64,000 nt of DNA from Octopus sinensis (GCF_006345805.1 NC_043002.1:42470001-42534000), one strand, 5' to 3'; positions 3,474 to 33,086 are shown, counted from the stretch's first letter. The notes: a model not told the origin generated them from the sequence alone. A program made the numbers and translations.

Positions 3474-4636
3474 ATTCCGATTCTGATGAAGTGGTAATTA
3501 TCGGCTCAGAAGGCTTAGATGATACAAATGACGGAGATGTTATCTTTGTATCACAGTACAAATCTTCTTCAGAACCCATTACCATAGATTGTACAACATC
3601 TAAAGAAGCAGAAAATGACAGTGCCAAAGTTGTTCATTTAAATGAAGAACAGCACTGTGAAATGGATGAAGATGATGTACAAGATATAAGTACTATTTCC
3701 TCAATTAAACTTGCAGACTTCTGTCAGCGTTCCAGTCAAATCTATAATGACGATAATGATCCCACAGATCAGCTTGTTATAAAGCCCCGTGACTCCCTTG
3801 GATCTTTAAGCATTGGTAATAACTTTGGTCTTTCTCTCTCGGTGGAAGAACACAATAAAACTCAATCAAAGCCAGTAATGGTTGTTGATGTTTCCCCAAG
3901 AATTGAAACTCCAATGGAAAATGATGGTGAGCCTTGTACTCATGAACTGAGTGTTTGTGATAAATGCATACCAGACAAAGAGGAAAATTCTGAATCTCGT
4001 ATGGATTTTAGGACTAATTTTGACAACACTGAGAATAAAGTGATCATGAAAAAAGAAGAAAATGTCTTGCCCCAAAACTCAGGAATTTGTAAATGGAATG
4101 TTGATGAGCCTGTTACGGATAATTGTTCTGGTCAAAAAGCCAGTGGTTTACAACTTCAAGAAGAAGAAGATAATGACACAAGTGTTACAATTACTCCTTG
4201 TAGCCAGACAGCTAATATGTTGTCATCAAAATATGATCCCTGCTGTTCTGATTCTTCATCAAATCCAAATCTTATTTATCATTGTATTAAAGAAAAGAAT
4301 GGCATCAGTGAACACCCTGTGGCTATGTGTCAAAAGCTGAAAACAAAATTCTGCCACTCTTCTGATCCTTCATCGCCAAACAATTCTCCGGATGTTACAT
4401 CGGTAATTGATCATGGCTCCCCTCGAAAGAAGCACATGTTAACTTCACGAACATGGATTCCAGCCTCTGTAATGGCAGAAGAGGATAATCAAAGAGCAGT
4501 AAAGAAAGGTGCTTGTGTAGCTTGCAAAGCACTGGTAAAAGAAGATGAAGGTTCATCTTGTGTTGATCACCATCTTACTTGTAGGGGATGTTTGGAGGAC
4601 AAAGTAAAAGCAGTTCTAAGTCGAAGATGTTTAGAG
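3474..4636 (+). CDS. Coding exon A: acidic/Ser-rich disordered region with SIM-like motifs, ending in the first six ligands of a RING (CVAC...CVDHH..CRGC)
   Basis: Lies within ORF 3395-4648. Polypyrimidine tract plus TAG acceptor at 3471-3473 (phase 1). Donor GAG|GTAAGT at 4636/4637 (phase 0). Confidence 0.88.
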
Positions 4637-5516
4637 GTAAGTTATTAGTTGCATGTAGTTATTTACCGCTCAGTTTTAAAATGCATAATGTGACTACAAT
4701 AACATTTCTAGATAAAACCATATCATTAATAAGATTACATTCAGTTTCTAAACTGCTTCCTTTTTGTTCTATTTCAATAAATTTTGAGCCACAGTAATTT
4801 GCTGATTATTTTTCAGTTGAAGTGTGACTGCTATTTTTTCTTGAAATACATGTCTCCTTGTAAGTGGCCTCTACTCTTTGGAGCTGGCTAGTTTCATGCC
4901 ACATGTGCCCAAAATCTCTAACCTCACTCCTTTCATCACTCATTTTGTGTCCACTTATCTCACTAGGTCCTCCACTTACAACTGGTTTCCTTAGAACATC
5001 AGGTCTTTGGACTTTACTGCAACTGTTAATTTACAAATGTTTCGTTGCTGTTGTTCAGCCTATCTTAGACGGCCTGTGAAAACCAGACCAAGTCATTAAA
5101 AACAGTATTGTATGTCAATGAAATTGTTACTAGGCTAACAAATAGCTGAATTTAAAGTCAATTAGATATGATGATGACTGTTACTGAGGTGCGGCTGAAA
5201 GTGTCAGACTAATTACTCAGAAAAACTGAGTGTTTAAATATCTAAAAACAATGGAGATGAGTTTGACAGGATCAGCTGATTGGACATATAGACAATGAAA
5301 GTCGGCGTGCATTTGGTCTTTAAAACCAAATGGTGATTACTCTATCTTGAGAATAACCACTGTTTAATGAGTATAAGCAGTATGCAATTTTAGTTTAATT
5401 ATCAAAAACAAGTAAATTTGTGATATTTGCAGTAGAATAAACACATAACACATGAAAAATATACATGACACCTTTCTTAAATGGCCATTGCACTTCAGTA
5501 TATAAATACGTATATC

Positions 5517-7090
5517 AAGATACACCTAAAAAAAATATTGCTACTGGTCCCTCACCAAGCTACTTCCCAACTTGCAACCTTTGGTGTAATGCCAAATCTC
5601 ATCCCAAAATTTCCTTTCAACTAACTTCCTGAAACCATTAATATAGATGCCACATGTTTCTGTGTTAACTTCTAAAACATGGTATGATGCCAAATCTAAA
5701 AATGTACTTCCTCACAAACACTTCTGTTAGTGTTTAATATGGACACTGCCATCTTTACTTTTGGGATTTGGACAGCGTGGCCACAAAAAATAAAGAAAAA
5801 GAAATAAGTTGGAAACCATATTGTTATGCTAGAAAACTTTCAATCTGCAGCAAACCAAGTTCTTGACAATGTTAAAGAATGTTTTTTTTTATATATATTA
5901 CAATTAAACTAATTTGAGAGGATATTTTAAAAATCTGTTTTATGTTTAAAGTTGTTATATTTATAATTAAAATTGGAAAAGACATGTCCAGGAAGTAAAC
6001 TATTGTTAATTAAAAGCACATGTGTGCTTGTGCATACATTATATTTACTCATGCAAAGTATACATGCTTTTAGTTTACATAAACATCTCTTTGCTAAAAC
6101 TTGCAAAAACACATTGCACATTACTATAGATAATTTATATTTCATAATTAATTCAACAACTTTTTTTTTTTTGCAATATTTGCTCTCTGGCATTTTCTTT
6201 TATAAACTAAAATAAATGGTATTAATACTGTTTTATAGTCACTTTGGTTTATATGGTGCTTTTAATCCCAGTCTTGAAACAATCTGATCGCAGTTGTTGT
6301 GTGTGTATGTGTGTTAACAGACTGGTAGGGTCAGAATATTAACTTGTTTTTGAAGGACAGAAACATAGACATACATTGATAGGATAAAATGTGTACATAG
6401 CTAGGATAAAATTGCTTGGAAATTAGTTCAGCAAACAAGATGAAGATAGTCAGAGACTATCCTCAAACTTTTTACATAGAATATTCTGTTTTATTTATAT
6501 ATTTACATAAAAATAATAGAATTTGACTCTACTCTGTGTGTGTCCAATATTATTGTGGACTACTTCTTAGATGTAAAGAGATTTAAGTTTCTTCTTCACA
6601 CTTTAATGCAAGCCTTTATGATATTTCTTTATATTTTACTATTTACTTTTTGATTTTTTTTTAATGTATTTTCTTCCTTTATAACTGTTAAAATGTGGTA
6701 AAAACATTTTGAATTGAACAGATGTCTCCATGATTATAATTTGCCTCTGTGTTTCCTAAGTGTTAGCCTAGATAGCCTATATGTACAAAAAGAAAAATAA
6801 CAGATCACTGTAGCAGATTTTGACCCCATGGATTATAACTCAATGAACCTACCTATTCAATCACAGTAATGTTACCTCAAATTCAAGATCCTTTAGTATC
6901 ATAGTAGAAATTTTTGCTGATATTATTATGTTTTAGAAGTTAACACAGAAACATGTGGCATCTATATTAATGGTTTCAGGAAGTTAGTTGAAAGGAAATT
7001 TTGGGATGAGATTTGGCATTACACCAAAGGTTGCGAGTTGGGAAGTTGCTTGGTGAGGGACCAGTAGCAATATTTTTTTAGGTGTATCTT
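5517..7090. repeat. Inverted repeat, ~164-bp arms (5517-5680 / 6928-7090), near-identical
   Basis: Manual reverse-complement comparison: two substitutions and one homopolymer length difference seen. Confidence 0.9.
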
Positions 7091-7516
7091 TGTGTCCATT
7101 TAAAAAAGAGGACAGTCAGAATTCTAAAAATGTTCCATTAATGTATTTGGAATTCTTGTTATGAAAATACCAATTGTTTGGAATGCCAACTTGGATTGCA
7201 ATCTCATAAAGAAATAAGGAAAACATTCTATAGCTGCTGCCTCTATTACTAGGGAAGAAAAGACTCTTTTTTCTTTCAGGTAGTAAGTATATTCTTGTAT
7301 TTGTTCCTTAGTGAAGTCATTTAATTTACTTTGTCACAAATTTCTGTGATAGGGACTATCATAATGTACATGTATGTGTGTTAATAGACTGGTAGGATCA
7401 GAATATTGACTTGTTTTTGAAGGACAGAAATATAGACATACATAGCAAAGATTAAATGGTTATTGTTTGGAAATTAATTCAGCAAATAAGATGAAGACAG
7501 TCAGAGACTATCCTCA
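6304..7516. repeat. Diverged direct repeat, ~150-165 bp (about 6304-6467 / 7371-7516)
   Basis: Shared tgtatgtgtgttaa.agactggtagg.tcagaatatt.acttgtttttgaaggacagaaa ... cagagactatcctcaa. Confidence 0.85.
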
Positions 7517-8246
7517 ATTGTCAATTTTACTGCCAGTTACTATCAAAGTTGACATGAGTTAGACCAACTATTACAAACTACAGGAAAATTCCAATCCCAT
7601 TACTTCTAAATAAATATAGTAAGTGTAACTGGAGAGAAAAATCTTTGGATTATGAAAGATTCAATACTTGAATTTCTAAAAGTAACTGATATGAGACATA
7701 GGCAATCTATCCAACTAGAGTTGTTTTTATTTATTTATTAAATTTTTGCGAGACTTTACCTGATATGCATTTAAACAATATCAATGAATATAATCTAAAA
7801 TAATATGCATTTCTGTTTATTGAGACAATCTTTTTTTACTGATTGTTAATTCCAATCTAAACAGGAAAAAAAACCTATTTAACATTAGTTAAATTAGCTT
7901 TGGCTAATTTATCTAGAAAAAAATTTTAGAAATTTGATTACCTAATCATTTTTTAAAATTATTTTATTTCCCACCTACACACACACGCACATACATGCAA
8001 GTATGTGTGCATGTTGAAAAAATGTATAATCATACTAGTCTTCTTATTCCAGGGAATTAGATTTATGTTTTGAATGGGATTGCAAAAAGCACAATAGTAT
8101 CAGCAAAAATTTCCACTATGTTTGATACTAAAGGATCTTTATCTTGAATTTGTGGTAACATTAGTGTGGTTGAATAGGTAGGTTCATTGAGTTATATTCC
8201 ATGGGGTCAAAATCTGCTACAGTGATCTATTATTTTTCTTTTTGTA
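6784..8246. repeat. Inverted repeat, ~145-150-bp arms (6784-6926 / 8094-8246)
   Basis: gatcactgtagcagattttgaccccatgga...caatgaacctacctattcaa is present as its reverse complement at about 8170-8230. Confidence 0.85.
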
Positions 8247-8982
8247 AGTGTGAATAATTGATAAGTTGCTAAGATCATCATCCAGCTATTAAAACAAACA
8301 TTGAAAGAACTAAGTTTTTAGTTATAGACATCTCCTTTCATATGCCAGTAAGAAAACAGACTCAATATAGACATATGAAGATATATGGTGTTCCAACTCT
8401 AGAATCAAGTAATGATTTAACTCTATTCCCCTGAACTGCCTAAAACTCTACTCTAGATAATCCTATACAAATGTTGGGCTGTATGTTATACCACATTGGT
8501 GTAAGGAAACACAGATCATGCTCCTATACATGTAAGACATCCAGTTGGAATTCTACAGAAAATCTAGGCTGGTTTGCAAGTTAGTGCCAATGCAGATTCT
8601 TTCCAAACTATTATTATTTAGGTGGATTTATATACTACCAAAAGAATCATGAGATTGTTTAAGATTTCATGTATGTTTTTTTTTATCTATATTCACAAGG
8701 ATTCTTCCTATATAACTTGTAAGTCATTGATTTGGTCACTTGCAATACAAATGTAATCTACTGAATAAATGCATATACAAATATATAAACAAGATTAAAA
8801 GTTGTACATTTATTTGTATGCAACAACTCAGGATTAAAAATTGAAAAATTATAATCTAGCTGAGAGAATTAAAGCATAATAATCTCGTCGACTGACATAT
8901 GCTATTTAATACAGTTTTCATAAAGAATCTAAACCATTATTCATTTATAATTCTTAAATAAATAAATTTTTATACTTGTGTG

Positions 8983-9021
<39 letters not shown>

Positions 9022-9120
9022 GAGAGAATTTAAATGTGTGTGTGTGTGTATGTATATATATATATATATATATATAATAGAGAGAATTTAAATGTGTGTG
9101 TGTGTATGTATATATATATA

Positions 9121-9518
9121 ATCTACTTGCAGTATTGCCCGGCGTTGCTCGGGTTTGTTTCGACTCTTTAGAATTGGAATTTTTGAAAAGTAAAAATTTT
9201 GCATTATGTAGCTTGTTATTCTCTTTAAGTGAACATTTTTCTGGTTGAAATACACCGAAAAATGGTGACACAGCAGTCAAAAAATTGTAAAAAAAACAGA
9301 TTTTCATAGAGAAAAAGCACCTTTTTGATGTAAATAATTTTTGGTGTTAACATGGTCCGATTTGAATTTTTTCTTCTACAGAAGGAAGAGCAAGCCTTCT
9401 TCTATCATACTCTCAATTTTGGTCAACTTGCGCCGCAGGGTTTCACAGGAGATAGTGTTAGTTGAAGGCTACCAAACCTGCCATACACAGACAACTTCAG
9501 CTTTATATATAGAGAGAT
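9121..9518. mobile_element. Putative non-autonomous Helitron/Helentron-like element next to (TA)n/(TG)n microsatellite
   Basis: One end reads tacttgcagtattgcccggcgttgctcggg and the other acacagacaacttcagctttatatatagagagat. These resemble invertebrate HINE/Helitron-type termini by recognition only. Confidence 0.5.
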
Positions 9519-9789
9519 GTGTGCACATGAGTATACACACCCTCATATAAATGCAAGTTGTTGCTATTATGTTAAACTGTCGTATGTCCAAATCTGACCA
9601 AATGCAGTTCTTTTGGTCAAACTATCATATCTCAAGCTGCTTCAGATGTCAAGATATCAAAAATTGTCAAAGTGTAGTACAAGTACAGTGGTTTTGCTAT
9701 GGAATGGTGAAACTATTATTGTGTTTTCTGAAAAAGCAACGTTGTGGACTTACGACACTTTTGCATAATAGCAACAAAGTATATTTAAA

Positions 9790-11045
9790 TATATGTAGTT
9801 AAATGCAAGCTACAGTACATATGGTTGGGAACAATATCAGAGGAAGGTTAACAGGGAAAATAGCTTTTGTATGTAGAAGATGCATAGGTACAATAAACAC
9901 CAAAAATGTACAGAAGATAGACTCCATTAACAGCCATTTGAGCCAGCTAGAGGTAGTAGATAGCTTCCGTTGTCTAAGTGACTAAGTTAGTAGCAGAGGT
10001 AGATGCTCCGAGAGCATAGCTGTGAAAATAAGATTTGGCAGGGCAAAGTCCAGAGAGCTCTGATCTCAGCTGGCAGCAAAGGACCTCGCTCTCAGAGTGA
10101 AAGGCAGATTGTATGATGCCTATGTGTAAACAACTATGCTACATGGCAGTGAAACATGGGCTGTGACAGCCAAGGACGTGCATAAGCTTGAAAGAAATGA
10201 AGCCAGTATGCTTTGCTGGATGTGCAATGTCATTGTGCATGTTCGACAGAGTGTAAACATCTTGAGATAAAAGTAAGGCATAAGAGGCATTAGATGTGGT
10301 GTGCAGGAGAGATGACTGCACTGGTATGGTTATGTGATGCATATGGATGAGGGCAGCTGTGTAAAGAAGTGCCAAACTCTGTGTAGGGAACCTGTAGTAG
10401 AGCTATACCCAGGAAGACATGGGACGAGGTGGTGAAGCATGATCTTTGAACTTTGGGCCTCACAAAGGCAATGACTAGTGACTGAGACCTTTGGTGATAT
10501 GCTGTCTTTGAGAAGACCTGTCAAGCCAAGTGAAATCATAGTTGTGGCTGATGCTGGTGTCACGTAACTGGCATCTGTGCCGGTTGCATATAAAAAGTAC
10601 CTTTCAAGCATTGGGCTTTACGGAGGCACAGTGGCTGAGCTTCTTTCGAGTGTTGGTCCTTGTGGAGGCACAGTGGCTGAGCTCTTTGCAAGTGTTGGGC
10701 CTCACAGAGGCCAAATGGCTGAGCTCTTTTTGAGTGTTAGGCCTCACGGAGGCATAGGAGCTGAGCTCCTTTTATGCATTGGGCCTCACGGAGGCAAAAG
10801 TGGCTGAGCTCCTTTCAAGTGTTGGGCCTCACAGAGGCAATGACAGAGGCCTTTAGCTTTATGTCACTCATGTTTGAGAAGCCCCATCAAACTGGGCAAA
10901 ATCGCAGTCGTGGCAGATACCTACACTCTTGGAGCAGTTGGCATTAGGAAGGACATTCAGTCATAGAAACCATGTCAAATCAGATTGGAGTCTGGTGCAG
11001 CTTTCCAGCTTTGGTCAAACTGTCCAACCCAATGATGATGATGAA
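9790..11045 (+). mobile_element. Decayed RTE-clade LINE, 3' part, with 42-bp minisatellite and (ATG)n tail
   Basis: Interrupted frames encode LEVVDSFR, RVKGRLYDAYV, MLHGSETWAVT, LERNEASML and RKTWDEVVKHDL. The 3' tail gttggcattaggaaggacattcag...atgatgatg is shared with the copy at 53-54 kb. Confidence 0.85.
10601..10840 (+). repeat. 42-bp minisatellite, ~6 copies, within the RTE 3' end
   Basis: gaggc recurs at 10623, 10665, 10707, 10749, 10791 and 10834. Confidence 0.9.
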
Positions 11046-14000
11046 TTGCAATTGTGACTGTAATAAAAAATAATGCCATCTGCATTAATGAAAATTACTT
11101 TCAAGAGACAAGGGAGAGAATTCATGTGACCAGAAATTAGGTTTGTTAGTCTGTATTCAATTATGTTCTTCACTGGAAAAGATCATAAATACAAGTATAT
11201 ATTGTGTGTGTGGAAATATCTAACTCTTATTTGTTCATCATCATTGCTTTATATCCATTGCTTATGCTGGCATTTGCTTGATGGGTTCACCACAATCTTA
11301 CTTTGAAGTTCCTGCCATCAACAATAGGTTAGAGAACATGTCTCACTTGTACATTCCATTTTTAGCATGGCTTCTTATGGTTGGATACCCTCCCTAATAC
11401 CCACTAATTTACAGTGTGCTGGGTACATTTTATCATGACACTAGCACTAGACAGCTTTTCTTGTCGTCATCCCCATGTTGTCTCTGTTCATTTGTCTATC
11501 ATTTTGCAGAGTGTACTGAGTACATTCTACTGCAACACAGTTAAAGAGACCCTTCTACCCTGTCTCCATTCATTCAAATCAGCATGATTAAGAAGTGAGA
11601 TAACTAGAATCAGAGAGTGGTAGAAGAGAAAGTATAACAAGAGGAAACAGAAATAGGGGCAAAAGGGTGAGAGATGAAGAATTGATGGAAGAGACAGTGA
11701 TAGATAGCTACATGCTTGTTGTTAATGAGATTGAATAGATAGAAAAACAAGATTTAGAGTGATAAGATGGAGACAGGATGATCATGGAATTCTTACCTAC
11801 TCATTTCCTACTTATTAAGTGTGTCAGTTTCCCTAATGGTTAAAGAGTTCTGTTTTTCATACTTAAGTAATTACAAAATTTACTTTGAGGTTACTCAATT
11901 TGAGGTTTTGCTGCTATGTCCAAAATTTCTTCTCTAAAACCTCTATATGAATTAGATCAACAGCATACCGAAGTTTCTGTTCATAGTTGGTCATAAATCC
12001 TCTGTTATGATCCAGAAGACTTAAGTGAACAAGACAACCATGCCCTGATGGACTGACCCTACCCATTTGCTAAATTTATCACTGAACATATTGATAATTC
12101 ATACTTTTATGACTGCACCTATGTACATGGTGTCTACATGGTGTCTTACATGGCTCTCATAATTCATTTATCTATTGCTGTTTTCTTTAGCAATCATCAC
12201 ATTACAGAACATGGGACCCAGTCAAATACTTTCTCCATGTTGATGTGTGTTAGATATCGTGGTTTACTCTTAGCTAAATACTTTTTTTAGTTGTCTCACT
12301 CGAGAAATAGCATTAACAGTATGTCTTTCTAATCTAAAACCAAATTGGGTCTCATCCTAAGTCTATTTTTAATCAGTTATGCTGTAGCTCTGCCTATAAT
12401 TTTTATAATCTAATCCATTAATTTGATGCTTCAAATTGTTGCTTTTCTGTAGTGCATCTCCTCTACCTGCTGACATTAATACCACTGTACTAATAATTAG
12501 GTATGACGCCTCTCTGTACTATCAGGTTGACTATCTAAGTGATTAGCTTATGACATGTTTTACTGGATAGATGTTTTAAGCATCTCAATGATTGTTCCTG
12601 ATGTTTCAGCTGCCTTCCATGTTTTCATTTTCTTAAACTCCACTTACAAATATAATACTGTCAACTTCAATGGCTGGTCCAGTGGTTACCCCTAGGAAAT
12701 CTTCTGTTGGATGTACTTGGAGTAGACCTCCTTACATTCTACTCATTTAACTCGTGTGCATGTACATATATAAAAATTTGCAACTCATCTACCATCAGTG
12801 CTGCATCCGAAGCTAAGTACCACCTCTGAGCTCCTGTAGAAGTATATGAATGTTCATTATCAGGATCATTATTTTATATAACAAGGGAATTATATCAGTT
12901 ACAGAAATTTACCTGTTAGAAATAGGTTTTATTCTATTGCACACATTAAAAATATCAGTTGAATTTTAATAATGTAAAGGAAAAGAATTTCACCTTTAAA
13001 ATGTTCTGCATTTAATTCCCTTTTGAGCTGAGGATGGACTGTTAGTACAAACTATACAATGAATGTCGGACAGTATGTTTATGGATATGGTTAGGAGTAA
13101 TTTATGGAATATGTCAAATATAAATATAGGAAATAGAGACACTGATGACAGCTCAGGATAACATTACAATTGAACAAAGCTGTCAGGCAAGTGTGAAAAA
13201 ATATATACTGATGCAGATTTTATTTTGTAATGTATGTTCACTATAAGAGATAGGTCATGAAATAAACGTATTGTGCTAAAATAAGAAAACATTTTTTTTT
13301 TAATATTAGCTTGTGAAAATTAATAGCGTAGGCTAATTATAACTTTATTGATAGCAGTTTAATTACCTATTAATATGATGTTCTTCAAAATAACTAATTT
13401 GTACTAGAAATAGCTAATAAATTTCTCTTTTCCTTACAAATTTAGCTTAGTAAGCAATTTTGTTTTATTAGTCTGCTTAAGTAGTTCTTTAAAAAGGGGG
13501 CTGTATAAGGCTTTAATTTGAATGTTATTATGTTTTACACAGTGTCCATCTACTGGTTAGCAATTCATCTGAAGCACTCTTAGATGGAACTAAAAAGAAA
13601 AAGAAAATAGCCATAGTCACAACTAATATATCCAATGCACTGACTGAGGATTATATTCAAATGCTGGGGCCAAATATAAACTGAGTTGGCAGCAATTGAT
13701 TGTTAATTGTGATACAAGTGATGTTAATACTAATGGTAATGGTAATGATCAAAAATGACCAAAACCTAATTTATTCTGTCAGGGAGTTTAGTTTATGGTT
13801 TGTAGATCAAGGATTTTTTTTGTTAAATAATTTTTGCTTGACCAGTTATCGGTCATATGTCAATAGCTTTATTAGTTTTTCTACTTCAGGATATAAATAA
13901 TCAGACATCATTCTAGTCAAATAATTTAATATTTTTCAAAAGAGAATTATCTAGCTTAGCTACTTTCAGCTACAGCAATGTTTCTTATTACTGTTTGTAT

Positions 14001-14779
14001 TAATGATACTAGAGAAACAGACTGGGTTTTATATAGTATCAAGTCTAATATCTCGTTCAGAGATCAAATCTTGCCATGGTCAATACAATAAATAAAAGTA
14101 ATTTTTGGGGCTTAATAAACTATTTTAAGCTTTCCCCTTAAAATAATTAAACCTGAGCTAGCTGACACTAATTGTGTAGATAAGTTATCACTGGTCTGGA
14201 TTTACCAACAAAGTCCACTTATTGAAACCATTTAACTTTATGTCCATTTAAGTATGTCACACCATTTGTTAAAGCATAATCATTAACCTTCCTCTTATCT
14301 TCTCTCTTGAGCATTTCTGACTTCATGTGACTTGTATAAGCTAAAATTATTGTTGTTACTTTTCGTTAGATTGTCCCAGTATCAAATAGCCTATACACTG
14401 TGCCAAAATATATAAGAAGTTTGTTAGTCCTTTCAAAGTTTTGGAGAATCTGAGAAATGTCGACAATTACAAATATGTTGCTCTGCATTGGTTGATTTTA
14501 ACATTTGACATCTCTTAATGTAACTTTACAATCATATCCTTTCCTCCCAAGGAATCATTTTACTTTTCATATCTCTCTCTTCACGTGATTCTAAGCAGTT
14601 TTCACATTAACATGATCATATAACATACCACTCTGTTTGGTTTCTTGAATGCCTGCTGACATCTCTAACTTGTTTTAAACCTTGATTCTAACATTTCTGA
14701 ATCTCTTTCACAGACTTGATTTACATTACTTTCATATCAATTCCTTGTTATTATCCTGCAGGAGTGCAGACATCAACAT

Positions 14780-17269: not shown

Positions 17270-17489
17270 CCCTTTAGTGTTCAGATTACTCTGTTAAATG
17301 TAATATTTTTTTACTCAAATTGTTTTGAATTAATCAAGCATTATCTTATAGCTTTGAGGTTTCAATGATGTGATTGTTTATTTTTAGAATGTCAATGTAG
17401 GTTAGGTGTGAGAGACTAGATATCGCCCGTTTGAATATAAAACATGTAGAATATCTGGGCCAGATATGGCCAGTTTAAACACTAAAGGG
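17270..17489. mobile_element. piggyBac-type non-autonomous MITE (220 bp)
   Basis: Perfect terminal inverted repeats CCCTTTAGTGTT / AACACTAAAGGG, flanked by TTAA on both sides (17266-17269, 17490-17493). Confidence 0.8.
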
Positions 17490-17589
17490 TTAAATGTTTA
17501 TTAGAAATTTAATGATTTCAAATAGTTTCACAATCACATTTTTTTAAAAGATTTTCTTATGTTTTGCACAGGTATATTTCATGTTTTAA

Positions 17590-22200: not shown

Positions 22201-22544
22201 CTAGAAGAATATTGAATTATGTCTGATAACCAGTTGATCTAGCAAGCGGGGCCTCATGTTAGTGAGTGGGGTGAGGTAGTGTGCAATAATTTTGATGAGC
22301 AGTAGGCCCCAAAATGGCAGGCATTCTCTCCTGATGCTCCCATACACTTGCTGGCTTCCAGTATGCAGAGTTTTCGGCTAGTAGCACTTGCATGTGCAAG
22401 TTGTTGGGAAAACGTCTTCCATTTACCATTTTCATCAATCTTAGGCTTCATGGCTAATTAGAGAGGACACTGGGGAACCACTTCAATGAAGCTTACTTAG
22501 TACAATATGACAGCATCTGGAAGTAGATACATTATATACATATT

Positions 22545-22545
22545 C

Positions 22546-22615
<70 letters not shown>
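22545..22615. repeat. (TA)n(CA)n microsatellite
   Basis: Direct reading. Confidence 0.9.
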
Positions 22616-22620
<5 letters not shown>

Positions 22621-24587: not shown

Positions 24588-24755
24588 GGTGGGAGTTCAA
24601 ATTCCACCGAGGTCGACTTTGCCTTTCATCCTTTCGGGGTTGATTAAATTAGTACCAGTTACGCACTGGGGTCAATATAATCGACTTAATCCATTTGCCT
24701 GTCCTTGTTTGTCCCCTCTGTGTGTAGCCCCTTGTGGGCAGTAAAGAAATAATAT
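24588..24755 (+). mobile_element. tRNA-derived SINE fragment (second family)
   Basis: B-box-like gagttcaaattcc followed by gaggtcgactttgcctttcatcctttcgggg. Degenerate relatives at about 14050, 18560, 31810 and 58090. Confidence 0.65.
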
Positions 24756-25599
24756 GATGGTCTCAAACATAATATCAATTCTACTTTTACATATCTGCTT
24801 TCTGACCAGGGTTTATTTTTACTTTTGTATTGAGGCATTGAAGTGATGGTAAGAGGCCTGAAACCATTAATATTACCAGTTACCACTAGATCAACTAAAT
24901 TGTATCTGTTTGCACACCCGTGTGACTTCAAGGTTTCTTTTTTGTAATTCAATGATTTTTACAGTGTATTTTGTAATTCAATGATTTTACAATAACTCAG
25001 TATCACAGTAAAGATAGTCAGGTGCTGTGACTTAGCATAAAATAAATGTCTGTATTGTGAAACACAACACTGGTGCCAGCTGTCTGCTATAAGCTCAACT
25101 ATAGACCATAGCAATGAACAACAATTCTTGCTCTTGTAACTTTACTATTCAATGTTTCTCTTACTGTCAAATGTTACATGGGGTAAGGGGGAGACTTTCT
25201 TGTGTCACTTAGCTCTGAAATGTTTCAAAGATAGTGAATAGATAAAAAATATAGTTGTGAAAGGTTACTTGTAATATTAGCACTTTTTTTTTTCCTTTTG
25301 AAGCTCTTTATTTTTCATTTTAACCCAATTGATGCCAACCTAGTTGACACTGCCCCAGGGTATATAATACAAAACATTACTTGATTTAAAATGTTCGTAT
25401 TAAATCAAAACTTTATTTTGCATAAAAACTTTTCTTTTACTTACATTCCAAATATCAACTTAAGTAAATAGTTATTTTATCAAATTCCACCAAATTCTTG
25501 ATTATTTTCAAGATTAATTGAAATTCACATACAGAATATTTCATAAACAAAATATGAATATGAGAGGGTTGAACTGCATATGTTAACTAAATAGTTATA

Positions 25600-26003
25600 G
25601 GTGCAGGAGTGGCTGTGTGGTCAGTAGCTTGCTTACCAACCACATGGTTCTGGGTTCAGTCCCAGTGCATGGCACTTTGGGGAAGTGTCTTCTATTATAG
25701 CCTCAGGCCAACCAAAGCCTTGTGAATGGATTTGGTAGACGGAAACTGAAAGAAGCCCATCGTATATATGTATATATATATATATATATGTGTTTATGTG
25801 TCTGTGTTTGTCCCCCCCAACATCGCTTGACAACCGATGCTGGTGTGTTTACATCCCCATAACTTAGCAGTTCAGCAAAAGAGATCGATAGAATAAGTAC
25901 TAGGCTTACAAAGAATAAGTCCTGGTGTCGATTTGCTCGACTAAAGGTGGTGCTCCAGCATGGCCGCAGTCAAATGACTGAAACAAGTAAAAAGAGTAAA
26001 GAG
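25600..26003 (+). mobile_element. Full-length tRNA-derived SINE (family A)
   Basis: A-box-like tggctgtgtgg, B-box-like ggttcagtccc, central (TA)n and 3' gactgaaacaagtaaaa(a)gag. Highly similar to the copies at 33.3, 57.5 and 58.4 kb. Confidence 0.88.
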
Positions 26004-26314
26004 TATAGTAACACGACCTGAAAACTGCAGACTTCTGTTTCACAACCACACATACCATTTAATCATCATTATCATCGTTTTAACGTTCACTTTTCCATGT
26101 TCACAAGGGTTTGATGGAATTTCAGGCAGATTTTTTTACATCCCTTCCTGTTGCCAATCATCAGCTCTTTCCAAATAATGTAATATTTCTCCATAATCAG
26201 GTATGTTTTTCAGAAGATTGGTCATGAAGGACATTACTTGCATGATGGTAGTAACACTTGTTTACTATGATCACATAATGTTAAGGTGAGACGACAGTGA
26301 CACACACACAAAAT

Positions 26315-26426
26315 GGGCTTCTTTCAGTTTCTACATACCAAATCTACTCAAGGCTTTTGTTGGCCCGGAGCTATAGTAGAAGACAGTGTGACTGAACCCA
26401 GAACCATATTGTTGGAAAGCAAACTA
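26315..26426 (-). mobile_element. Partial SINE family A copy, inverted relative to 25600-26003
   Basis: gggcttctttcagtttc...gctatagtagaagaca...gactgaacccagaaccat is the reverse complement of the SINE 5' half. Confidence 0.7.
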
Positions 26427-26789
26427 ATCAATTATTAAATTTTTTTTTTTTTTTACATCTAGTAATCAAACATGCTAGAAGAAAATCTCAAATCACACTG
26501 AATTTCCTTCAGTTTGGAACTTATTTGCTCAGAGCTCTACATAATCAGGGGTGGCTTCAGCTAAACAATGCCCAAACTTCAGTGCAAGTTGAACATCGAG
26601 CAGTCGCTGTGTATTGAAATTATAAGAATAGATACTAATACGCTAATGAGTTTGTGTTTGGTTTTGATAGCTTTTTTAGTTTAAACACAACTAAATTATT
26701 ACCAACTAGCTGGCCCCATGCCTTCAAAAATGACAGCTAATTGTAGTATTTTATATGTAAATAAAGTAAAAAATAAGGTACATAGTAAT

Positions 26790-27500
26790 CAAACAAACAT
26801 TCACATCCCTTGCACACACATATACACATATACTCACACAGAATTGAAACACTGTTTGACTTTTATTTTCAGTGTTGAATGTTCACCATCCCTCTTCCAT
26901 TGCATACACAAACATTCACATGACTCCCTTTTACATACACAAACATATACTCATGCAGAGTTGAAACGCTGTTTGATTTCTTTTTTTCGCAATAGAACTT
27001 CCATCATCCTACTACCAAGATTGCCATCACCCCTTCCTTCCTTATTCATCTGTCACCCCTTCCTTTCTCATTCACATGTTGTGACAGAGAAAGACACAAG
27101 AGTATTATTTTTATAGATAAGGTATATAATAATCACACAAACATTCACATACTTCGCTTGTACGCGCACACTCATATGCTCAGAGTTGAAATGCTATTTG
27201 ATTTTTCCTTTCACAGTTGAATGTTCACTCACACATACAAACATTCACATTTTGCCATCATCCTTCCTTCCTTATTCATCTATCATCCCTTCCTTTCTCA
27301 TTCATGTTGTGACTGAGAAAAATACAAGAGTACAAGTGTCTATTATAAATCACCATCCCACTTCCATTGCATGCGCACACACACACACACCTCATTTTTT
27401 ACATACACGCATGCATATACTCACACAGAGTTGAAACACTGATTGATTTTATTTTTCACCCCTTCCTTTCTCATTCATATGTTGTGGTGGAGAGACACAA
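26790..27500. repeat. Degenerate tandem/segmental repeat, irregular units
   Basis: ttgaaa.rctgtttga-like, acaaacattcacat and ccttcctttct(c)attca...tgttgtga motifs each recur 3-4 times. Confidence 0.65.
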
Positions 27501-27666
27501 GAATATTATTATAGTAGATTCTTTGTAATATTACAAAAAGAACCCACATGTTCACACATTCTACAACAAAACCTCTTACATGTACATACACACACTTGTC
27601 TAGATTTCCTAACCCACGGCGATGGCAAATATGAAACTGATACTGTATTTAAATCTTCAAATTTTA

Positions 27667-27715
<49 letters not shown>

Positions 27716-27724
27716 TACACACGA

Positions 27725-28050
27725 GTGTGTAGTGGGACATAGTCCTTAAACACTGAGGATGTGTGGAAACTAGAAAAAAAAATGAAGTAAGCATGCTTCA
27801 CTGGATATATAATATTAGTGTGCATGACAGTATTAAAGAGCTGAGAGAAAAACTGGATGTAAGAGGAATTGAATGTAATGTGCAAGAGAGAAGACTGCAA
27901 TAGCATGACCATGTGATACGATCACCACATAAAGAAGTGCTACATTCTCAAAATGAATGATACCTGTGAAAGACCTGGGACAAATTAGTGAAAACTGATC
28001 TCAAGAGGTTGCATCTCATGGAGAGATGATCATGGCCTGTTTTAATTGGT
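27725..28050 (+). mobile_element. Old RTE LINE 3' ORF fragment
   Basis: Broken frames give LNTEDVWKLEK, EVSMLHWIYNISVHD, LREKLDVRGIECNVQERRL and KTWDKLVKTDL, homologous to ORF 53159-53761. Confidence 0.65.
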
Positions 28051-31000
28051 AATTTGTGATGTGACCAACAAAGCAAGAACGGTGATTCAAAAGTCACAAA
28101 AAGTGGTAGTTCTGTAAATTTAGATATATGCACCATTAAGTCTACTGTTGCTGCTCACACTTTGTCACCCTCTAATTTCTTCATCACTCACTTTCCTATC
28201 ACCCTTCCTACACTCTGTTCCTCCATCATCCCTCTCTTCACTCAGCCTGTATCATCCCTCTCTTCACTTGGCCTCTATCACTCAAGCTGGCCCATCTCAA
28301 AGTCTGTTTTATAGGAGACTACATTGGACCACATACACTCAATACATTCTACCTCTTCTTCCCCTTCTGTACTGCCTGTCATCTGTTTGCTATCATTCTT
28401 TTGCACTTTTACTTCAACGCATTCAGATCCCTGTCGTTGCTCCTATCTCCAGGAACACATATGCCTTCTATTATCCTTTCTTGGCTATGTTGCCACTCTC
28501 TTTCTGCCATCATACTCTTGCTCCTTATCTTCCTCACATCCCAGATCTCTGTCATCTTTTTGCCTTTTGTCATTTCCTTACCTGCCTAGCCAAGTTGCCT
28601 TGATTACACATGTACATCTCAATAAACTGACTACAACCCATTTTGAAATCTATATACAAAATCCTACACTGAACTGAATCTGCCAGTATGCTCTACTTTC
28701 AATCACCCTTCTTATTCTGCCTGTCATCACTCTGCTTGGCTCCTTTTGCTATCATACTTTTGCTCCTTTTCTTCTTCACATCTGTATCTAATATTGCTCT
28801 TATCTCCTGGAACACATTGCCTTATATTATTCTCTATCTACTTAGCTATGCTGTCTCAGAATGTACCTGTCTTAGAATACGAAGTGCCTTTATCACCCAA
28901 TCCCTATATCATGCATCCCTTTTAACACCATCGTTTATGCCTCTATCAGCCACACCTCTGACTTTTTAAAGAGGTTGCTGACTCTTTAAAGAGGTTGTGC
29001 AGTTCTGAGCTCCTGTCAGGCATGTTGTGGACATGGATATCTCTCTAGTGTTGTGGACATGGATATCTCTCAGTATACTCATAAAAGTGCATAGTTACCT
29101 TGTCAAGGACATGACTCAATTTTAGTGTTGGTGCCAAGAAAAGTAGTGCAATACATTCTGTAAAGTGGTTTGTGTTTGGAAAGGCATCCAACCATTGAAA
29201 CTGAATCAAAAATGAAATGCATTAGTAAGATGTGGTTCTCCAATTCATCTAGGTAAGCAGTTCACTTGAATACATACTGAATATGTACTTATTCTGATCA
29301 GAGTAAGCCATCCAACCGCTATCATCATGGAAAGTTGGCAATAAACAATGACAATAATGATAGTGTGTGTGTGTGTGTGTGTGTGTGTGTTAGTGTTAGA
29401 AGTGGATGGTTCTCAACTGCAAGAGAATGGCATAAATGAATAGATGGTGGAATGAACTAACTATATGTTGTATGTTTAGCATTACTTTGAGGGTCTGATC
29501 TCGTGTTCATTGTGTTGTGCACCAAAAGTTAGTAATCATTGTATATAAAAGGTAATCATTGTTGAATGGAAATGAAATATGTATGTTAGATGAAAAGATA
29601 TTATTTGCTGATGTTAGACTGAGTTTAAGCAAATCCACTATAATTGTAAGCAGCCAGTAATTATTGTAGTCCAGTGAACTTGGTTCGCTTTGCTTGGAAA
29701 GACCTCTAGCATAGCAGTATCTGATTAAATAAGCCATTCAAATAACTTTTCTCTCTCTCTCTCTCTCTCTCTCTGTTTTTTTTTTTCCACATTATCATTC
29801 TTTATTGCTGTTGTTTAACCCGTGTCAGTTCTGAGATCAAATTGGCTCCTAATCAGATATTCCAGCCATGGCCATTCTCCTTCTTATAGTGCATTTAGAA
29901 CTACATTATTCACTGTGCCCAGTTTTGAAGACAATAGGATGACTTGAATGTAACTTGACTACTACTACTAGCAGTTTGAGTGATCGTGTAGAAGCTTCCT
30001 CTCGTTGGTTTGCATCACTCTTTATTGTTAGATATGCTATCATATCATAAGATGTAGAATTTCTGGTCTCATTTTGAAGATGGTTAAAAATTTGTGAAAA
30101 TTAATTTTAGCTGCTACATTGTGAAAGTGACACAACTATATAGCAATTCATTTATTAGTTCAATGCAGTGGTAGTGATTGGGGAGTGTTCACAAAAATTT
30201 GAATTTAGATCTCGAATATAAGGCACAGCAGGTAAGATAAAAACAGCTGCAGATATTAAGCTGCTATAAATTAAGCAAAAATCTACTTCATCCGTGACAA
30301 CATGGTTAAATGGACACTAACCTAAGAAGTGTGATGATAGTGATTCTGTTTTTAAACTCTTGAACTTTGATTGACCTTTTCATGTCTAAAGTTATTTCTG
30401 TTATAATCTGTCAGCTGTTATGCTACCACTGTTTTAAATGCAGATTGATACATGCATTCTGATCCTTCATTCATAGTTCATCATTGAAGCAGTTGGATGT
30501 ACTGATGATGATTGACAACCATGCAAAACAGCTTAATAATAATGTTAGTGGTAGTGGTGGTGATGATGATAATGTAAAAAAAAAAAAAAGTGGGGGGAAT
30601 ATTTTCACCAGAACGCACAGCTGTTACTTTTATATTTTTATGTAACTATCATTCTTAGATCACTTAGCAGTGGGGAAAAACACTAGAGAAGGCAAATGAT
30701 CAATCAATAAAATGCATATTTCTGCCATGAATGCAACTTGTTTGAATAAAAGACCATCTTCTTTAGACTACATGAATGTACATGTGTATGCACATACAAT
30801 ATACCAAGTGGGATGGAGGAGAAAGTGTTAAACTTAGCATGCTAATGTTATTTCTTCTTCAATTTCTATGTTTTAAATTGAAAGTGGTTATAATATTTTG
30901 AAGTAGTGAAGGAATTTTTTTCACAAGTGAAAAAAAATATATTGCAAAATTTTCACTTTAAGGCTTCTGGCTAACATGTTAGTTGATATAAAAATAACAT

Positions 31001-31394
31001 TTTTCATTATTGATATTTTTCCATATTTTTTTTTATGGAGCTGTCCTCTATTTATGTTTTATTTTAATAAAGTAATAATAATGTTATTTCTTAACATTTT
31101 AAACTTTAATATACTAATTTTAAAAATCAAATTGCAGTAAGGAATATATTTACTGTGTGTTTGCACATGTGTGTGTGTGAGTTAATACCCCAGAGGAAAT
31201 TATTTTTGAAGGATTCTTTAGTTGTGTGTGTGTAATATTATAGGTTATAATTGGAATGCTAGGTTTCCAATATATATATAAATATATTTATTTATATATA
31301 CTTAAATTAGACTTTAAGATATAGGATTCTCATACTTTCATCAATGTACACATGAATAAATCTGTTTATTTATATATTCATACTTTTTTTTCAG

Positions 31395-31443
31395 ACATCT
31401 GTAAAGTGCCTAGAAGCAGGCTGTAACAATTTCTATTCAAAAC
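31395..31443 (+). CDS. Coding exon B (49 nt): TSVKCLEAGCNNFYSK, supplies RING ligands 7-8
   Basis: tttttttcag| acceptor and C|GTATGT donor. Phase 0 to 1 fits both neighbours. The C-x4-C completes the RING begun in exon A. Confidence 0.85.
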
Positions 31444-32853
31444 GTATGTATATTCTCTCTCCCTCTCTCTTTCTCTTTCCTTGCAGCAGTTTATTTGTTT
31501 TAACATAGTTTTCTTTTTCTTTTTCTTTTTTTTATGAAGCATTACTTTTTTTTTATATGATTATTGAAATTTATAATGATAGGAAGCCCCAAAGGGTCCA
31601 AGATAACATGTAGTTAACAATCATTTCCAGAAGCAGTATTCTTAGCAAGAATTTAGGAATATTGAGTTTACTTGCTCATCTTCACCCATTCCATTAAGGA
31701 AATTATTATGAGTGCACAAATAGAGATGTTCTAGTGTTGTTTACCTAGAGCAACAAATTGGCAGTCATTCGAATGTCTGCTAGAAAACCTTGTGGTATTT
31801 ATTTTGGCCCTCTGCACTTCGACTTCAAATCCTGCCATGGTCAATTTAGTATTTTATCTTTCTGGGGTTATAAAATAAAGTACTAAATACTGGGGTCAAT
31901 TCCTCATCTCTCTCTGAATTGACTACACTATACCATGAAAAGGGTCATGGAAAACTTCTTACACCATCCCTTTCTTTAGAAATGGATGAGCTGAGTAAGG
32001 GGCTAAGTAACCTCTTCCTATAGAAAAGCTGCCATGGAACAGAAATATATGTAATTTAAAGTTTAGTTGTTCACAATAACTGCATTATTCTATGCTTAAT
32101 TATTAAATTTTCAATAGTATGTATTAAGCTCATTATCCAAAATAGATAAAGCAAATTTCACTATTTCACTAAAATTTGGTCAATAAAAAAGAAATTGTAT
32201 GCAAGGTGGTTAAGCAAATAAATTGAACTATGTAAACAAAGGAGTTTATGTTGGTATGGATATATAAAAATGTATGTAAATTGAGAAAGTGCTAGATAAG
32301 AACAAAGAAAGAAAAATCAAAATATTGGATTCAAAACTGTAAAAGATGCTTATGCCATTGTAGATCCACTCAAATCCATATCAAGAAAACAAAATATATA
32401 TTTCAATTTATTAAATGTAACAGAGAATTTTGTGACTGGTAGTTTTAGAACTGGTCACATGTGGATACAAATTTTATTTCAAATAGTAACTGTACAAAAC
32501 ACTACACTGTATTTTATTTTTATATGATTTTAGTCACAAAGAAGGGAATATGCTTACAACTTTCACAGGCCCTCTAAGACTAGTGAGATTGGCACAAATG
32601 ATGGTAAGCTTGATCAGCTATAAGTTTACAACAGCAAAGAAAATATGTGCTATGAAGGAGATAGCAGACATTTAATATTTGGGAAGGAAGGATTTAGTCA
32701 TGGTGGTTAGTGTAGGGTCTGGGAAGTGAGACATAGAACAGATGAGAGGGAAAGCAGTTATTCTATCTAGTGAGCTGGGGTGGAAGTAATATGCAACCAC
32801 ACAATCTCTCCTTTCTCTGATTTATTATTTTTCCTTTCCATTCTATTTTCCAG

Positions 32854-33086
32854 ATGAACTGAGGCGTTGTTTGCCTGCAATGATAGTGGATATTCTTGAA
32901 GAAGTTCTTGAACAATATTATGTTGATTTCATAACAAATATGCTAATGAAATCCTATTCTCCAAGTGATACCTCTGTGGGGCCTGATAATGAAATGACTG
33001 TAGGAGAACTTGAACGTCCTCGAAAGCGGTTAGCAATCAGTTATGATAGCTTACCCGAAAACTGGGTTGAAATGGAATCAAAATTT
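32854..33086 (+). CDS. Coding exon C: post-RING helix (HELRRCLPAMI...) and linker to the pre-catalytic LPENWVEM motif
   Basis: ctattttccag| acceptor and TTT|GTAAGT donor. Overlaps ORF 32871-33098. Phase 1 to 0. Confidence 0.88.

What the first reader, a model, noticed from the sequence alone, without database searches (positions are those of the whole stretch)
4514..33086. RNF216/TRIAD3-like RBR RING1 fused to a PARP domain, with no IBR-RING2
Seen in sequence: the spliced protein reads CVACKALVKEDEGSSCVDHHLTCRGCLEDKVKAVLSRRCLE|TSVKCLEAGCNNFYSK|HELRRCLPAMI. This is C-x2-C-x11-C-x3-H-x2-C-x2-C-x19-C-x4-C followed by EL...LP..I. From memory, it closely parallels human RNF216 RING1 (C..C...E...CADAH.FC..CL...L.CMEGSC...F...ELEKVLPQTI). 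Established knowledge: RBR RING1 docks E2~ubiquitin, while catalysis needs the IBR-RING2 cysteine. Here no IBR or RING2 follows; a ~55-aa linker leads straight to the PARP pre-catalytic LPENW motif. Inference: a chimeric gene in which an E2-recruiting module is wired to a mono-ADP-ribosyltransferase. It would be a single-chain analogue of ubiquitin/ADP-ribose coupling such as DTX3L-PARP9.
Basis: partly seen in the sequence, partly recalled or inferred. Interest (0 to 1): 0.85.

Follow-up and report, generated by a model that had tools for sequence, protein, structure and literature searches.

The report
RNF216-derived RING1 fused to PARP
This octopus gene joins the front half of an RNF216-type ubiquitin ligase (SUMO-binding motifs, first RING finger, following helix) to a PARP12-like ADP-ribosyltransferase domain; the fusion is real and shared by molluscs, an annelid and a brachiopod, but the residues RNF216 uses to hold its E2 enzyme are not kept, so the proposed ubiquitin/ADP-ribose coupling is unproven.

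Summary
Six GT-AG exons (3474-41063, + strand) splice in frame into a protein of at least 1236 aa. It has N-terminal SIM-like motifs, a C3HC4 RING with a C-x4-C last pair split over exons A and B, a conserved helix, and an H-Y-I PARP domain.

The RING is an RNF216-type RING1:
- An orthologue profile hits RNF216 as the only RBR ligase in the PDB (E=1.6e-6).
- hhalign against RNF216 orthologues gives 97.4% (E=1.2e-11).
- The AF2 model's best fold match is RNF216 (8eb0).

No IBR or RING2 lies anywhere in the 64-kb window.

The architecture is not unique to octopus. It defines an uncharacterised family in molluscs, an annelid and a brachiopod. A sister subfamily still keeps the RNF216-like N-terminal domain and the IBR (RING1-IBR-PARP). 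This shows that a PARP12-like domain replaced the catalytic RING2.

The aromatic positions conserved in RNF216 RING1, including the tested E2-contact Y519, are polar or variable here.

My best reading is a mono-ADP-ribosyltransferase steered by SUMO/ubiquitin-system modules. I obtained no RNA evidence for octopus.

The parts
3474..4636 (+). Exon A (387 codons; begins with the last two bases of a split codon, so at least one upstream coding exon is missing). Mostly acidic and disordered; ends with the first six zinc ligands of the RING.
   Evidence: AG acceptor and GT donor. Colinear with orthologues. Profile A1 hit E=4e-6. Single copy in the genome.
3474..3560 (+). SIM-like cluster: acidic/serine-flanked hydrophobic cores (DSDSDEVVIIGSE and GDVIFVSQ). 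It corresponds to SIM 2 and SIM 3 of the triple motif at the extreme N-terminus of orthologues.
   Evidence: Motif scan of octopus and 17 orthologues. This is motif-level evidence only. RNF216 is drawn with SIMs in PMC9834252 Fig. 1a.
4514..4636 (+). RING1, ligands C1-C6 (C-x2-C-x11-C-x3-H-x2-C-x2-C) and the central helix.
31395..31443 (+). Exon B (49 nt): RING1 ligands C7 and C8 with the RBR-type four-residue zinc loop II (C-LEAG-C) and the start of the shared [FY]-P/S-x-S/H-E-L motif.
   Evidence: Splice sites. A1 profile hit. Loop II of 2-4 residues is described as the RBR type in PMC9834252.
32854..32951 (+). Exon C, first part: ELRRCLPAMIVDILEEVLEQYYVDFITNMLMK, the equivalent of the RNF216 RING1-IBR helix. 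It is longer and more hydrophobic here.
   Evidence: A1 hit E=4e-11. Aligned to RNF216 ELEKVLPQTIL.... Predicted as a helix in AF2 models of orthologues.
32952..33050 (+). Exon C, middle: cysteine-free variable linker of about 33 aa, where RNF216 and subfamily B carry the IBR.
   Evidence: pLDDT below 50 in the orthologue model.
33051..33086 (+). Exon C, end: start of the PARP catalytic domain (LPENWVEMESKF). The RNF216-like helix and the PARP start lie in the same exon.
34131..34276 (+). Exon D: N-terminal strands and helix of the PARP domain (…RIQNPILWKYY…).
   Evidence: Splice sites. Alignment.
35510..35661 (+). Exon E: PARP core with the catalytic His (LFHGT).
   Evidence: Pfam PF00644, 31.2 bits against a cut-off of 26.7, for 35511-35660..
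39094..39144 (+). Exon F, start: GSYFAGEASYSHQFTDD, holding the catalytic Tyr.
39145..40853 (+). Exon F, middle: in-frame Q/H/P-rich low-complexity insert of about 570 aa inside the PARP domain.
   Evidence: Insert length varies from 69 to 672 residues between the Tyr and Ile motifs across the family.
40854..41063 (+). Exon F, end: C-terminal PARP strands with Ile at the third catalytic position (PKIFVIFD), followed by the stop codon.
   Evidence: Pfam PF00644, 22.5 bits. H-Y-I triad.
4637..31394 (+). Intron 1 (26.8 kb). It holds repeat-derived ORF fragments and no IBR- or RING2-like coding sequence.
   Evidence: Six-frame search with the RNF216-type IBR-Rcat profile gave a best E of 2. ORF pieces have no Pfam hits. 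No residues are missing relative to orthologues at the A|B junction.

Best explanation
Shown. Window positions 3474-41063 hold one protein-coding gene. It belongs to an old, uncharacterised lophotrochozoan family that arose when the catalytic half of an RNF216-type RBR ubiquitin ligase was replaced by a PARP12-like mono-ADP-ribosyltransferase domain. The replaced half was the IBR-RING2 helix, the RING2/Rcat domain and the C-terminal helix. A sister subfamily (B) still has the RNF216-like N-terminal domain, RING1 and IBR in front of the PARP domain. The octopus gene belongs to subfamily A. That subfamily has also lost the IBR, carries tandem SIM-like motifs at its N-terminus, and has a long disordered insert in a PARP loop.

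Follows from established knowledge. Without a RING2 cysteine the protein cannot act as an RBR ligase. An RBR-type RING1 with a four-residue zinc loop II is not expected to discharge E2~Ub directly. The H-Y-I triad predicts mono-ADP-ribosylation.

Inferred. The retained RNF216 parts work as targeting or regulatory modules. The SIMs would bring the enzyme to SUMO-modified proteins. The zinc-bound RING1 plus its amphipathic helix would serve as a protein-interaction platform (for ubiquitin, a ubiquitin-system partner, or self-association). The PARP domain then mono-ADP-ribosylates nearby substrates or itself.

The architecture and origin deserve about 0.9 confidence. The targeted mono-ART mechanism deserves about 0.4.
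For: Gene model:
- All splice sites are GT-AG and in phase.
- Colinear 40-48% identity to full-length orthologues; 88.8 bits to profile A1.
- Uninterrupted RING+PARP CDS on a 3-kb Logan contig of a relative, as expected of a cDNA-derived contig.

RNF216 origin:
- A1 against the PDB gives RNF216 at 1.6e-6, with no other RBR ligase at E up to 10.
- hhalign gives 97.4%, E=1.2e-11, over 81 columns, against a profile that itself matches human RNF216 at 3.3e-89.
- Foldseek's top hit is 8eb0 RNF216, TMq 0.64, rmsd 2.8 Å.
- A search of 1.84 billion proteins with A1 returned RING+PARP proteins and RING1+Rcat proteins with RNF216 spacing, plus fragments carrying neither motif.

Subfamily B:
- Keeps the IBR (E from 1e-7 to 1e-14, no Rcat).
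- Some members (Haliotis, Lingula) keep the RNF216-orthologue N-terminal domain (E=4e-11 and 1e-8).

Single origin: one branch separates all 51 PARP rows from all 48 RBR rows (SH-aLRT 97).

Spread: bivalves, gastropods, a chiton, the annelid Owenia and the brachiopod Lingula.

PARP domain:
- Pfam PF00644.
- The orthologue model matches PARP12 at TM 0.92 and 38-40% identity.
- H-Y-I in 32 of 43 sequences and H-Y-V in 3; the regex missed a motif in the other 8.

Constraint: the eight zinc ligands are invariant in 43 distinct sequences, and the helix motif LPxMVV[ED]ILE[DE]KL is strongly conserved.

SIM cluster: conserved at the N-terminus of subfamily A.
Against:
- The first coding exon was not found.
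- No cephalopod protein model was retrieved.
- SIMs are motif-level predictions only.
- No binding partner of the RING1-helix is known. The one complex prediction, with ubiquitin, gave no answer.
- The 570-aa insert might impair catalysis.
- The RBR rows of the tree were chosen by similarity to the PARP-class profile, and the tree has only 97 columns.
Confidence: 0.6

Rival explanations
1. RING1 still docks an E2~ubiquitin conjugate and places it next to the PARP active site. One chain then couples ubiquitin and ADP-ribose, for example by ADP-ribosylating ubiquitin or the E2, or by discharging ubiquitin onto ADP-ribose.
For: - The RING1 fold, all zinc ligands and the RBR-type loop II are kept.
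- In RBR ligases RING1 binds the E2 canonically, and the domain that followed it received ubiquitin (PMC9834252). A PARP domain now sits where that acceptor domain sat.
- Subfamily B keeps RING1-IBR intact.
- A hydrophobic or Pro residue after C7 (column 52) is kept.
Against: - Column 11 (RNF216 Y519, whose mutation lowers E2~Ub discharge) is K/Q/S in subfamily A and D/E/S in subfamily B.
- Column 36 on the central helix is Y in 71% of RNF216 orthologues but Q/K/R here.
- Columns 16, 28 and 42 lose their aromatic residues.
- The IBR-RING2 helix that binds donor ubiquitin is gone.
- E2~Ub binding to RNF216 was undetectable without allosteric di-ubiquitin even with the whole RBR present.
Confidence: 0.2
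2. Ubiquitin-reader model. The RING1-helix (with the IBR in subfamily B) keeps the RBR allosteric ubiquitin site. It steers or switches on the PARP domain in response to ubiquitin chains such as K63.
For: - In RNF216, HOIL-1, HOIP and Parkin the I44 patch of an allosteric ubiquitin binds the RING1-IBR helix (PMC9834252).
- That helix is the best conserved non-zinc element of the family.
- Some subfamily B members also keep the N-terminal domain shared with RNF216 orthologues, and PMC9834252 draws RNF216 with a CUE domain.
Against: - Subfamily A, which includes the octopus gene, lacks the IBR strand that completes the site.
- The helix residues differ from those of RNF216 orthologues.
- The complex prediction with ubiquitin gave no answer, which is not evidence either way.
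Confidence: 0.15
3. Annotation artefact. Exon A belongs to another transcript, or the RING-like exons are chance cysteine patterns or a decaying remnant of an RNF216 gene next to an unrelated PARP gene.
For: - A 26.8-kb intron separates exon A from exon B.
- No octopus RNA evidence was obtained.
- No cephalopod protein model was found.
Against: - The RNF216-like helix and the PARP start lie in one exon (C).
- Orthologues in three phyla carry the same continuous RING-helix-PARP protein, with no gap at the junctions.
- All reading frames are open, and the zinc ligands are invariant.
Confidence: 0.04

Closest known systems
RNF216 (TRIAD3), an RBR E3 ubiquitin ligase (PDB 7m4m, 8eb0)
   Same: - RING1 with the same ligand spacing, including the four-residue zinc loop II.
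- The [FY]-P-x-S-[EQ]-L…L-P motif and the following helix.
- SIM-type motifs N-terminal of the RING (PMC9834252 Fig. 1a legend).
- Subfamily B also shares the N-terminal domain and the IBR.
   Different: - No RING2/Rcat with its catalytic cysteine, no IBR-RING2 helix and no C-terminal helix. In this gene there is no IBR either.
- The aromatic RING1 positions conserved in RNF216 orthologues, including Y519, are not kept.
- A PARP domain follows instead.
PARP12 / PARP7 / PARP11 group of mono-ADP-ribosyltransferases
   Same: - The catalytic domain is closest to PARP12: TM 0.92 and 38-40% identity for the orthologue model.
- The next-best sequence hits after the orthologues are PARP12-like proteins.
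- H-Y-I triad.
   Different: - No WWE domain and no CCCH zinc fingers (Pfam finds only PF00644).
- RNF216-type N-terminal half.
- Variable disordered insert inside the catalytic domain.
DTX3L-PARP9 (and DTX2-PARP7) ubiquitin/ADP-ribose coupling
   Same: A RING-type module and a PARP-type module act together, here in one chain.
   Different: - In the Deltex systems the RING-DTC domains perform the coupling, and PARP9 does not catalyse it (PMC12687431).
- No DTC domain is present here, and the RING is of the RBR RING1 type, not a canonical RING.
- E2 binding is not supported by residue conservation.
Other PARPs with ubiquitin-system modules (Dictyostelium U-box-macro-PARP, fungal UBCc-PARP6/8, UIM-PARP10)
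   Same: A PARP catalytic domain fused to a ubiquitin-pathway module, as catalogued in PMC2964712 and PMC4245714.
   Different: Term look-ups in these two surveys (RING, ubiquitin, IBR, Lottia/mollusc) turned up no RBR-derived RING1 or RING1-IBR fused to PARP. The module here is a truncated RBR, not a U-box, an E2 fold or a UIM.

Membership tests
RBR E3 ubiquitin ligases (RNF216 subfamily) | RING1 of the RNF216 type | tested here: met
   A1 against the PDB gives RNF216 at E=1.6e-6. hhalign gives 97.4%. Foldseek's top hit is 8eb0. The octopus protein scores 88.8 bits against A1.
RBR E3 ubiquitin ligases (RNF216 subfamily) | IBR (BRcat) domain after RING1 | tested here: not met
   The linker after the helix has no cysteines (the only Cys past the RING lies in the helix motif). 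No hit of the RNF216-type IBR-Rcat profile in the protein or in any frame of the window. Subfamily B relatives do have it.
RBR E3 ubiquitin ligases (RNF216 subfamily) | RING2/Rcat with the catalytic cysteine | tested here: not met
   No Rcat motif and no profile hit in the octopus gene or in any of the 51 PARP-class rows.
RBR E3 ubiquitin ligases (RNF216 subfamily) | Canonical E2-binding surface on RING1 | tested here: inconclusive
   Y519-equivalent and helix aromatic positions are not conserved. Binding itself cannot be tested here. No suitable E2 sequence was available: the only intact intronless E2 found was RAD6-like.
PARP / ARTD family | PARP catalytic fold (Pfam PF00644) | tested here: met
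   Exon E scores 31.2 bits, above the 26.7 cut-off; exon F scores 22.5 bits. The orthologue model matches PARP12 at TM 0.92.
PARP / ARTD family | Catalytic triad H-Y-E (poly) or H-Y-I/L/V (mono) | tested here: met
   LFHGT, GSYFA and PKIFVIF give H-Y-I in octopus and in 32 of 43 family sequences. Enzyme activity itself was not tested.
PARP12 / PARP7 / PARP11 orthologues | WWE domain (and CCCH fingers in PARP7/12) before the catalytic domain | tested here: not met
   Pfam finds only PF00644 in the exon pieces and in full-length orthologues. True PARP12-like hits in the same search carry PF02825, PF25261 or PF18044.
Deltex-type RING-DTC ubiquitin/ADP-ribose couplers | DTC domain next to a canonical RING | tested here: not met
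   No Pfam family other than PARP in the exon pieces or orthologues. The RING is of the RBR RING1 type.
SUMO-targeted proteins with clustered SIMs (RNF4 / RNF216 style) | Two or more hydrophobic SIM cores flanked by acidic/Ser residues within a short stretch | tested here: met
   Two motifs in octopus exon A; typically two to three, often at the extreme N-terminus, in most subfamily A orthologues. SUMO binding cannot be tested with these tools.

The most novel reading that the evidence does not exclude
The RBR scaffold was kept because it still presents ubiquitin (as E2~Ub or as a bound chain) to whatever domain follows it. With a PARP domain in that place, the family would be an animal enzyme that ADP-ribosylates ubiquitin, an E2, or ubiquitylated or SUMOylated substrates. 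That would make it an endogenous, single-chain writer of mixed ubiquitin/ADP-ribose marks built on an RBR platform.
Probability: 0.1. Interest if true: 0.9.

Novelty: new variant of a known kind. Interest (0 to 1): 0.6.

Why it matters
RBR ligases are defined by RING1 handing ubiquitin to a catalytic RING2. Here evolution removed RING2 and put an ADP-ribosyltransferase in its place. It kept that arrangement in at least three phyla, with an intermediate form (RING1-IBR-PARP) still alive.

This gives ubiquitin/ADP-ribose cross-talk research a natural, testable fusion. It asks what an RBR RING1 (with or without the IBR) does when it has no RING2 to serve.

I found no description of this architecture in two family-wide PARP surveys or in full-text searches. 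The proteins are already in public databases without a function.

Tried and rejected
- **PDB search with exon A alone.** RNF216 appeared only at E=6.3, which is not significant. The orthologue profile was needed.
- **Pfam on exon A and on the orthologue RING pieces.** No RING family reached its cut-off.
- **A Pfam accession for an RNF216 RING, guessed from memory.** It does not exist in this library.
- **Cephalopod or own-locus protein models.** Three word-indexed searches covering lengths 360-2080 aa returned none.
- **First coding exon.** A naive scan of window 1-3473 and of 30 kb upstream found no convincing Met+SIM exon.
- **Canonical RNF216 or a subfamily B gene in this genome.** Not found with two proteins and one profile. 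Because genes here are matched exon by exon and short exons score poorly, this does not show absence.
- **Complex prediction of the RING1-helix (P0001:434-536) with octopus ubiquitin.** No answer, score 0.02. This is neither support nor evidence against binding.
- **E2 docking test.** Not run. The only intact intronless E2 ORF in the genome is RAD6-like, not a UbcH7/UbcH5 type.
- **Pseudogene or artefact reading.** Rejected on conservation.

Full report
**What is in the sequence**

The window is AT-rich eukaryotic DNA. It comes from a 2.72-Gb genome, at contig C6:42470001-42534000.

On the + strand, six open segments join through AG acceptors and GT donors with matching phases:

| Exon | Coordinates |
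|---|---|
| A | 3474-4636 |
| B | 31395-31443 |
| C | 32854-33086 |
| D | 34131-34276 |
| E | 35510-35661 |
| F | 39094-41063 |

I did not find it in the window or in 30 kb upstream.

**Is the gene model right?**

I could not get RNA evidence for octopus. The runs that hold exon A are only guessed to be RNA.

The model rests on comparison instead.
- A search with the C-terminal PARP piece found full-length mollusc proteins of 880-1190 aa. Those that are not truncated carry the same C3HC4 motif roughly 230 residues before the PARP His.
- They align without a gap at the octopus exon junctions.
- The spliced octopus protein aligns colinearly from the RING into the PARP core at 40-48% identity, E down to 1e-69.
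- It scores 88.8 bits against a RING+helix profile built without it (A1).
- The same profile, run on all six frames of the window, picks exons C, A and B as its three best hits.
- One relative's protein (P0010) is encoded as an uninterrupted 2.7-kb CDS on a 3-kb contig of a sequencing run, as expected of a cDNA-derived contig.
- Exon C holds both the RNF216-like helix and the start of the PARP domain. The chimera therefore does not depend on the long intron.
- The locus is single copy.

**Is the RING an RNF216 RING1?**

Yes, by four independent lines.
- Exon A alone was not significant against the PDB (E=6.3). The orthologue profile A1 hits RNF216 (7m4m, 8eb0) at E=1.6e-6 over 78 columns with all eight ligands in register. 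No other RBR ligase appears at E up to 10.
- A1 searched against 1.84 billion representative proteins gave 154 hits. By motif these fall into two classes, plus fragments carrying neither motif. One class has the RING followed by PARP motifs. The other has the RING followed about 160 residues later by an Rcat motif, which is the RNF216 spacing.
- A profile of that second class (A3) matches human RNF216 at 3.3e-89 over the whole RBR. A1 against A3 by hhalign gives 97.4% probability, E=1.2e-11, over 81 columns.
- An AF2 model of the RING+helix (mean pLDDT 72) has RNF216 8eb0 as its best Foldseek match: E=1.1e-3, TMq 0.64, rmsd 2.8 Å. Other RBR RING1 domains reach TMq around 0.5 and ordinary RINGs stay near 0.4 or below.

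Features shared beyond the ligands are the four-residue zinc loop II and the [FY]-P-x-S-[EQ]-L…L-P motif leading into the helix. A 2-4-residue loop II is the RBR type, against two residues in canonical RINGs (PMC9834252).

**Is there a hidden IBR or RING2?**

No.
- A profile of the IBR-Rcat region of 37 RNF216-type proteins finds nothing in any frame of the 64 kb (best E=2). The positive control works in the same run.
- Pfam IBR hits in the genome lie on other contigs.
- The octopus protein lacks no residues relative to orthologues at the A|B junction.

**The family and its origin**

Named members come from bivalves, gastropods, a chiton, the annelid Owenia and the brachiopod Lingula. They are listed as 'uncharacterized protein' or 'Poly [ADP-ribose] polymerase', and one as 'RNF216-like'.

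A tree of the RING+helix puts all 51 PARP-fused rows on one side of a single branch and all 48 RBR rows on the other (SH-aLRT 97). It has only 97 columns, and the RBR rows were chosen by similarity to the PARP-class profile.

The PARP-fused side has two groups:
- **Subfamily A** holds the octopus gene. It has no cysteines between helix and PARP, and no IBR.
- **Subfamily B**, together with a long-branch pair, keeps a clear RNF216-type IBR (E from 1e-7 to 1e-14 on the IBH half of the profile — that is, the IBR half — and none on the Rcat half). Some members (Haliotis, Lingula) also keep the roughly 70-aa N-terminal domain found in invertebrate RNF216 orthologues (E=4e-11 and 1e-8).

Subfamily B is therefore an RNF216 whose IBR-RING2 helix, Rcat and tail were replaced by a PARP domain. 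Subfamily A went further: it lost the IBR and begins with two or three acidic-flanked SIM-like motifs. RNF216 itself is drawn with SIMs and a CUE domain (PMC9834252 Fig. 1a legend).

I found neither a subfamily B gene nor a canonical RNF216 in this genome with the queries used. Given the exon-by-exon matching, that does not show absence.

**The PARP half**

- Pfam PF00644 hits exon E above its cut-off and exon F below it.
- An AF2 model of a compact orthologue (P0044:387-739; mean pLDDT 82) has a confident RING, a long helix, a disordered linker and a confident PARP domain.
- The nearest solved structure is PARP12, at TM 0.92 and 38-40% identity.
- The triad is H-Y-I in octopus and in 32 of 43 family sequences, the mono-ART type.
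- There is no WWE or CCCH domain.
- The roughly 570-aa Q/H/P-rich insert in exon F is the long end of a variable insert present across the family.

**How it most likely works**

Shown:
- The protein has a zinc-ligand-complete RBR-type RING1, a conserved amphipathic helix, SIM-like motifs and an H-Y-I PARP domain.
- It lacks every element that carries ubiquitin in an RBR.

From established knowledge:
- Without Rcat it is not an RBR ligase.
- RBR RING1 domains hold E2~Ub in the open state and do not drive direct discharge (PMC9834252).

RNF216 orthologues conserve C at column 9 (human C517), Y/F at column 11 (human Y519, whose mutation lowers E2~Ub discharge), F16, F28, Y36 on the central helix and F/Y42. 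Both PARP subfamilies have polar or variable residues at all of these. They conserve a different, largely charged set instead (E34, K38, K44, K46) and a more hydrophobic helix.

Canonical E2 docking is therefore not supported, though not excluded.

I commit to a targeting/adaptor reading. The SIMs, and in subfamily B the RNF216-like N-terminal domain and IBR, bring a mono-ART to SUMO- or ubiquitin-marked sites. RING1-helix acts as an interaction or regulatory platform. I put about 0.4 on this mechanism, 0.2 on E2~Ub recruitment and 0.15 on a retained allosteric-ubiquitin reader.

A complex prediction of the RING1-helix with ubiquitin gave no answer.

**Comparison with what is known, and novelty**

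- The protein is not a member of the RBR family, because IBR and Rcat were tested and not met.
- It is not a PARP12 orthologue, because it has no WWE or CCCH domain.
- It does not work like DTX3L-PARP9, where the RING-DTC part does the coupling and PARP9 does not (PMC12687431).
- PARPs fused to other ubiquitin-system modules are known: U-box, UBCc and UIM (PMC2964712, PMC4245714).
- Neither those surveys nor full-text searches mention an RBR-derived RING1 or RING1-IBR fused to PARP.

I rate it a new variant of a known kind. It is real, old and conserved, it is already present but unnamed in databases, and its function is unknown.

Noticed in passing
protein P0037 (scallop): A protein named mind-bomb-like carries MIB, ankyrin and ZZ Pfam domains plus a PARP catalytic domain. 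This is another ubiquitin-ligase-module + PARP fusion in molluscs.
   Followed up: no
window 39145-40853: In-frame Q/H/P-rich insert of about 570 aa inside the PARP domain. Across the family the distance between the Tyr and Ile motifs ranges from 69 to 672 residues.
   Followed up: partly
window 20461-22194 and 53159-54530: ORF fragments inside the 26.8-kb intron and downstream of the gene, with no Pfam hit. The stretch 53740-54530 is a tandem repeat with a period of about 36 aa in an open frame. Probably transposon remains.
   Followed up: partly
window 45412-46480 and 1454-1944: Kilobase-scale TA/CA-type microsatellite tracts that stay open in several frames and produce spurious long ORFs.
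   Followed up: no
L004:272-754 (G000:C4:33355571-33356053): Intronless 160-aa RAD6/UBE2A-B-like E2 ORF. It was the only full-length single-exon UQ_con match without a stop codon in the genome search.
   Followed up: partly
G000:C3:112788153-112790420 (L009, L010): Polyubiquitin gene with at least ten head-to-tail identical 76-aa units in one 813-aa open frame.
   Followed up: no
proteins P0053, P0054, P0057, P0062 and about 15 others: Many database 'proteins' of 370-630 aa match the RING profile only up to column 46-49 and end there. That is exactly the octopus exon A/B boundary. They look like ORF calls running from exon A into the intron on genomic contigs, which suggests the intron position is conserved in other species.
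   Followed up: no
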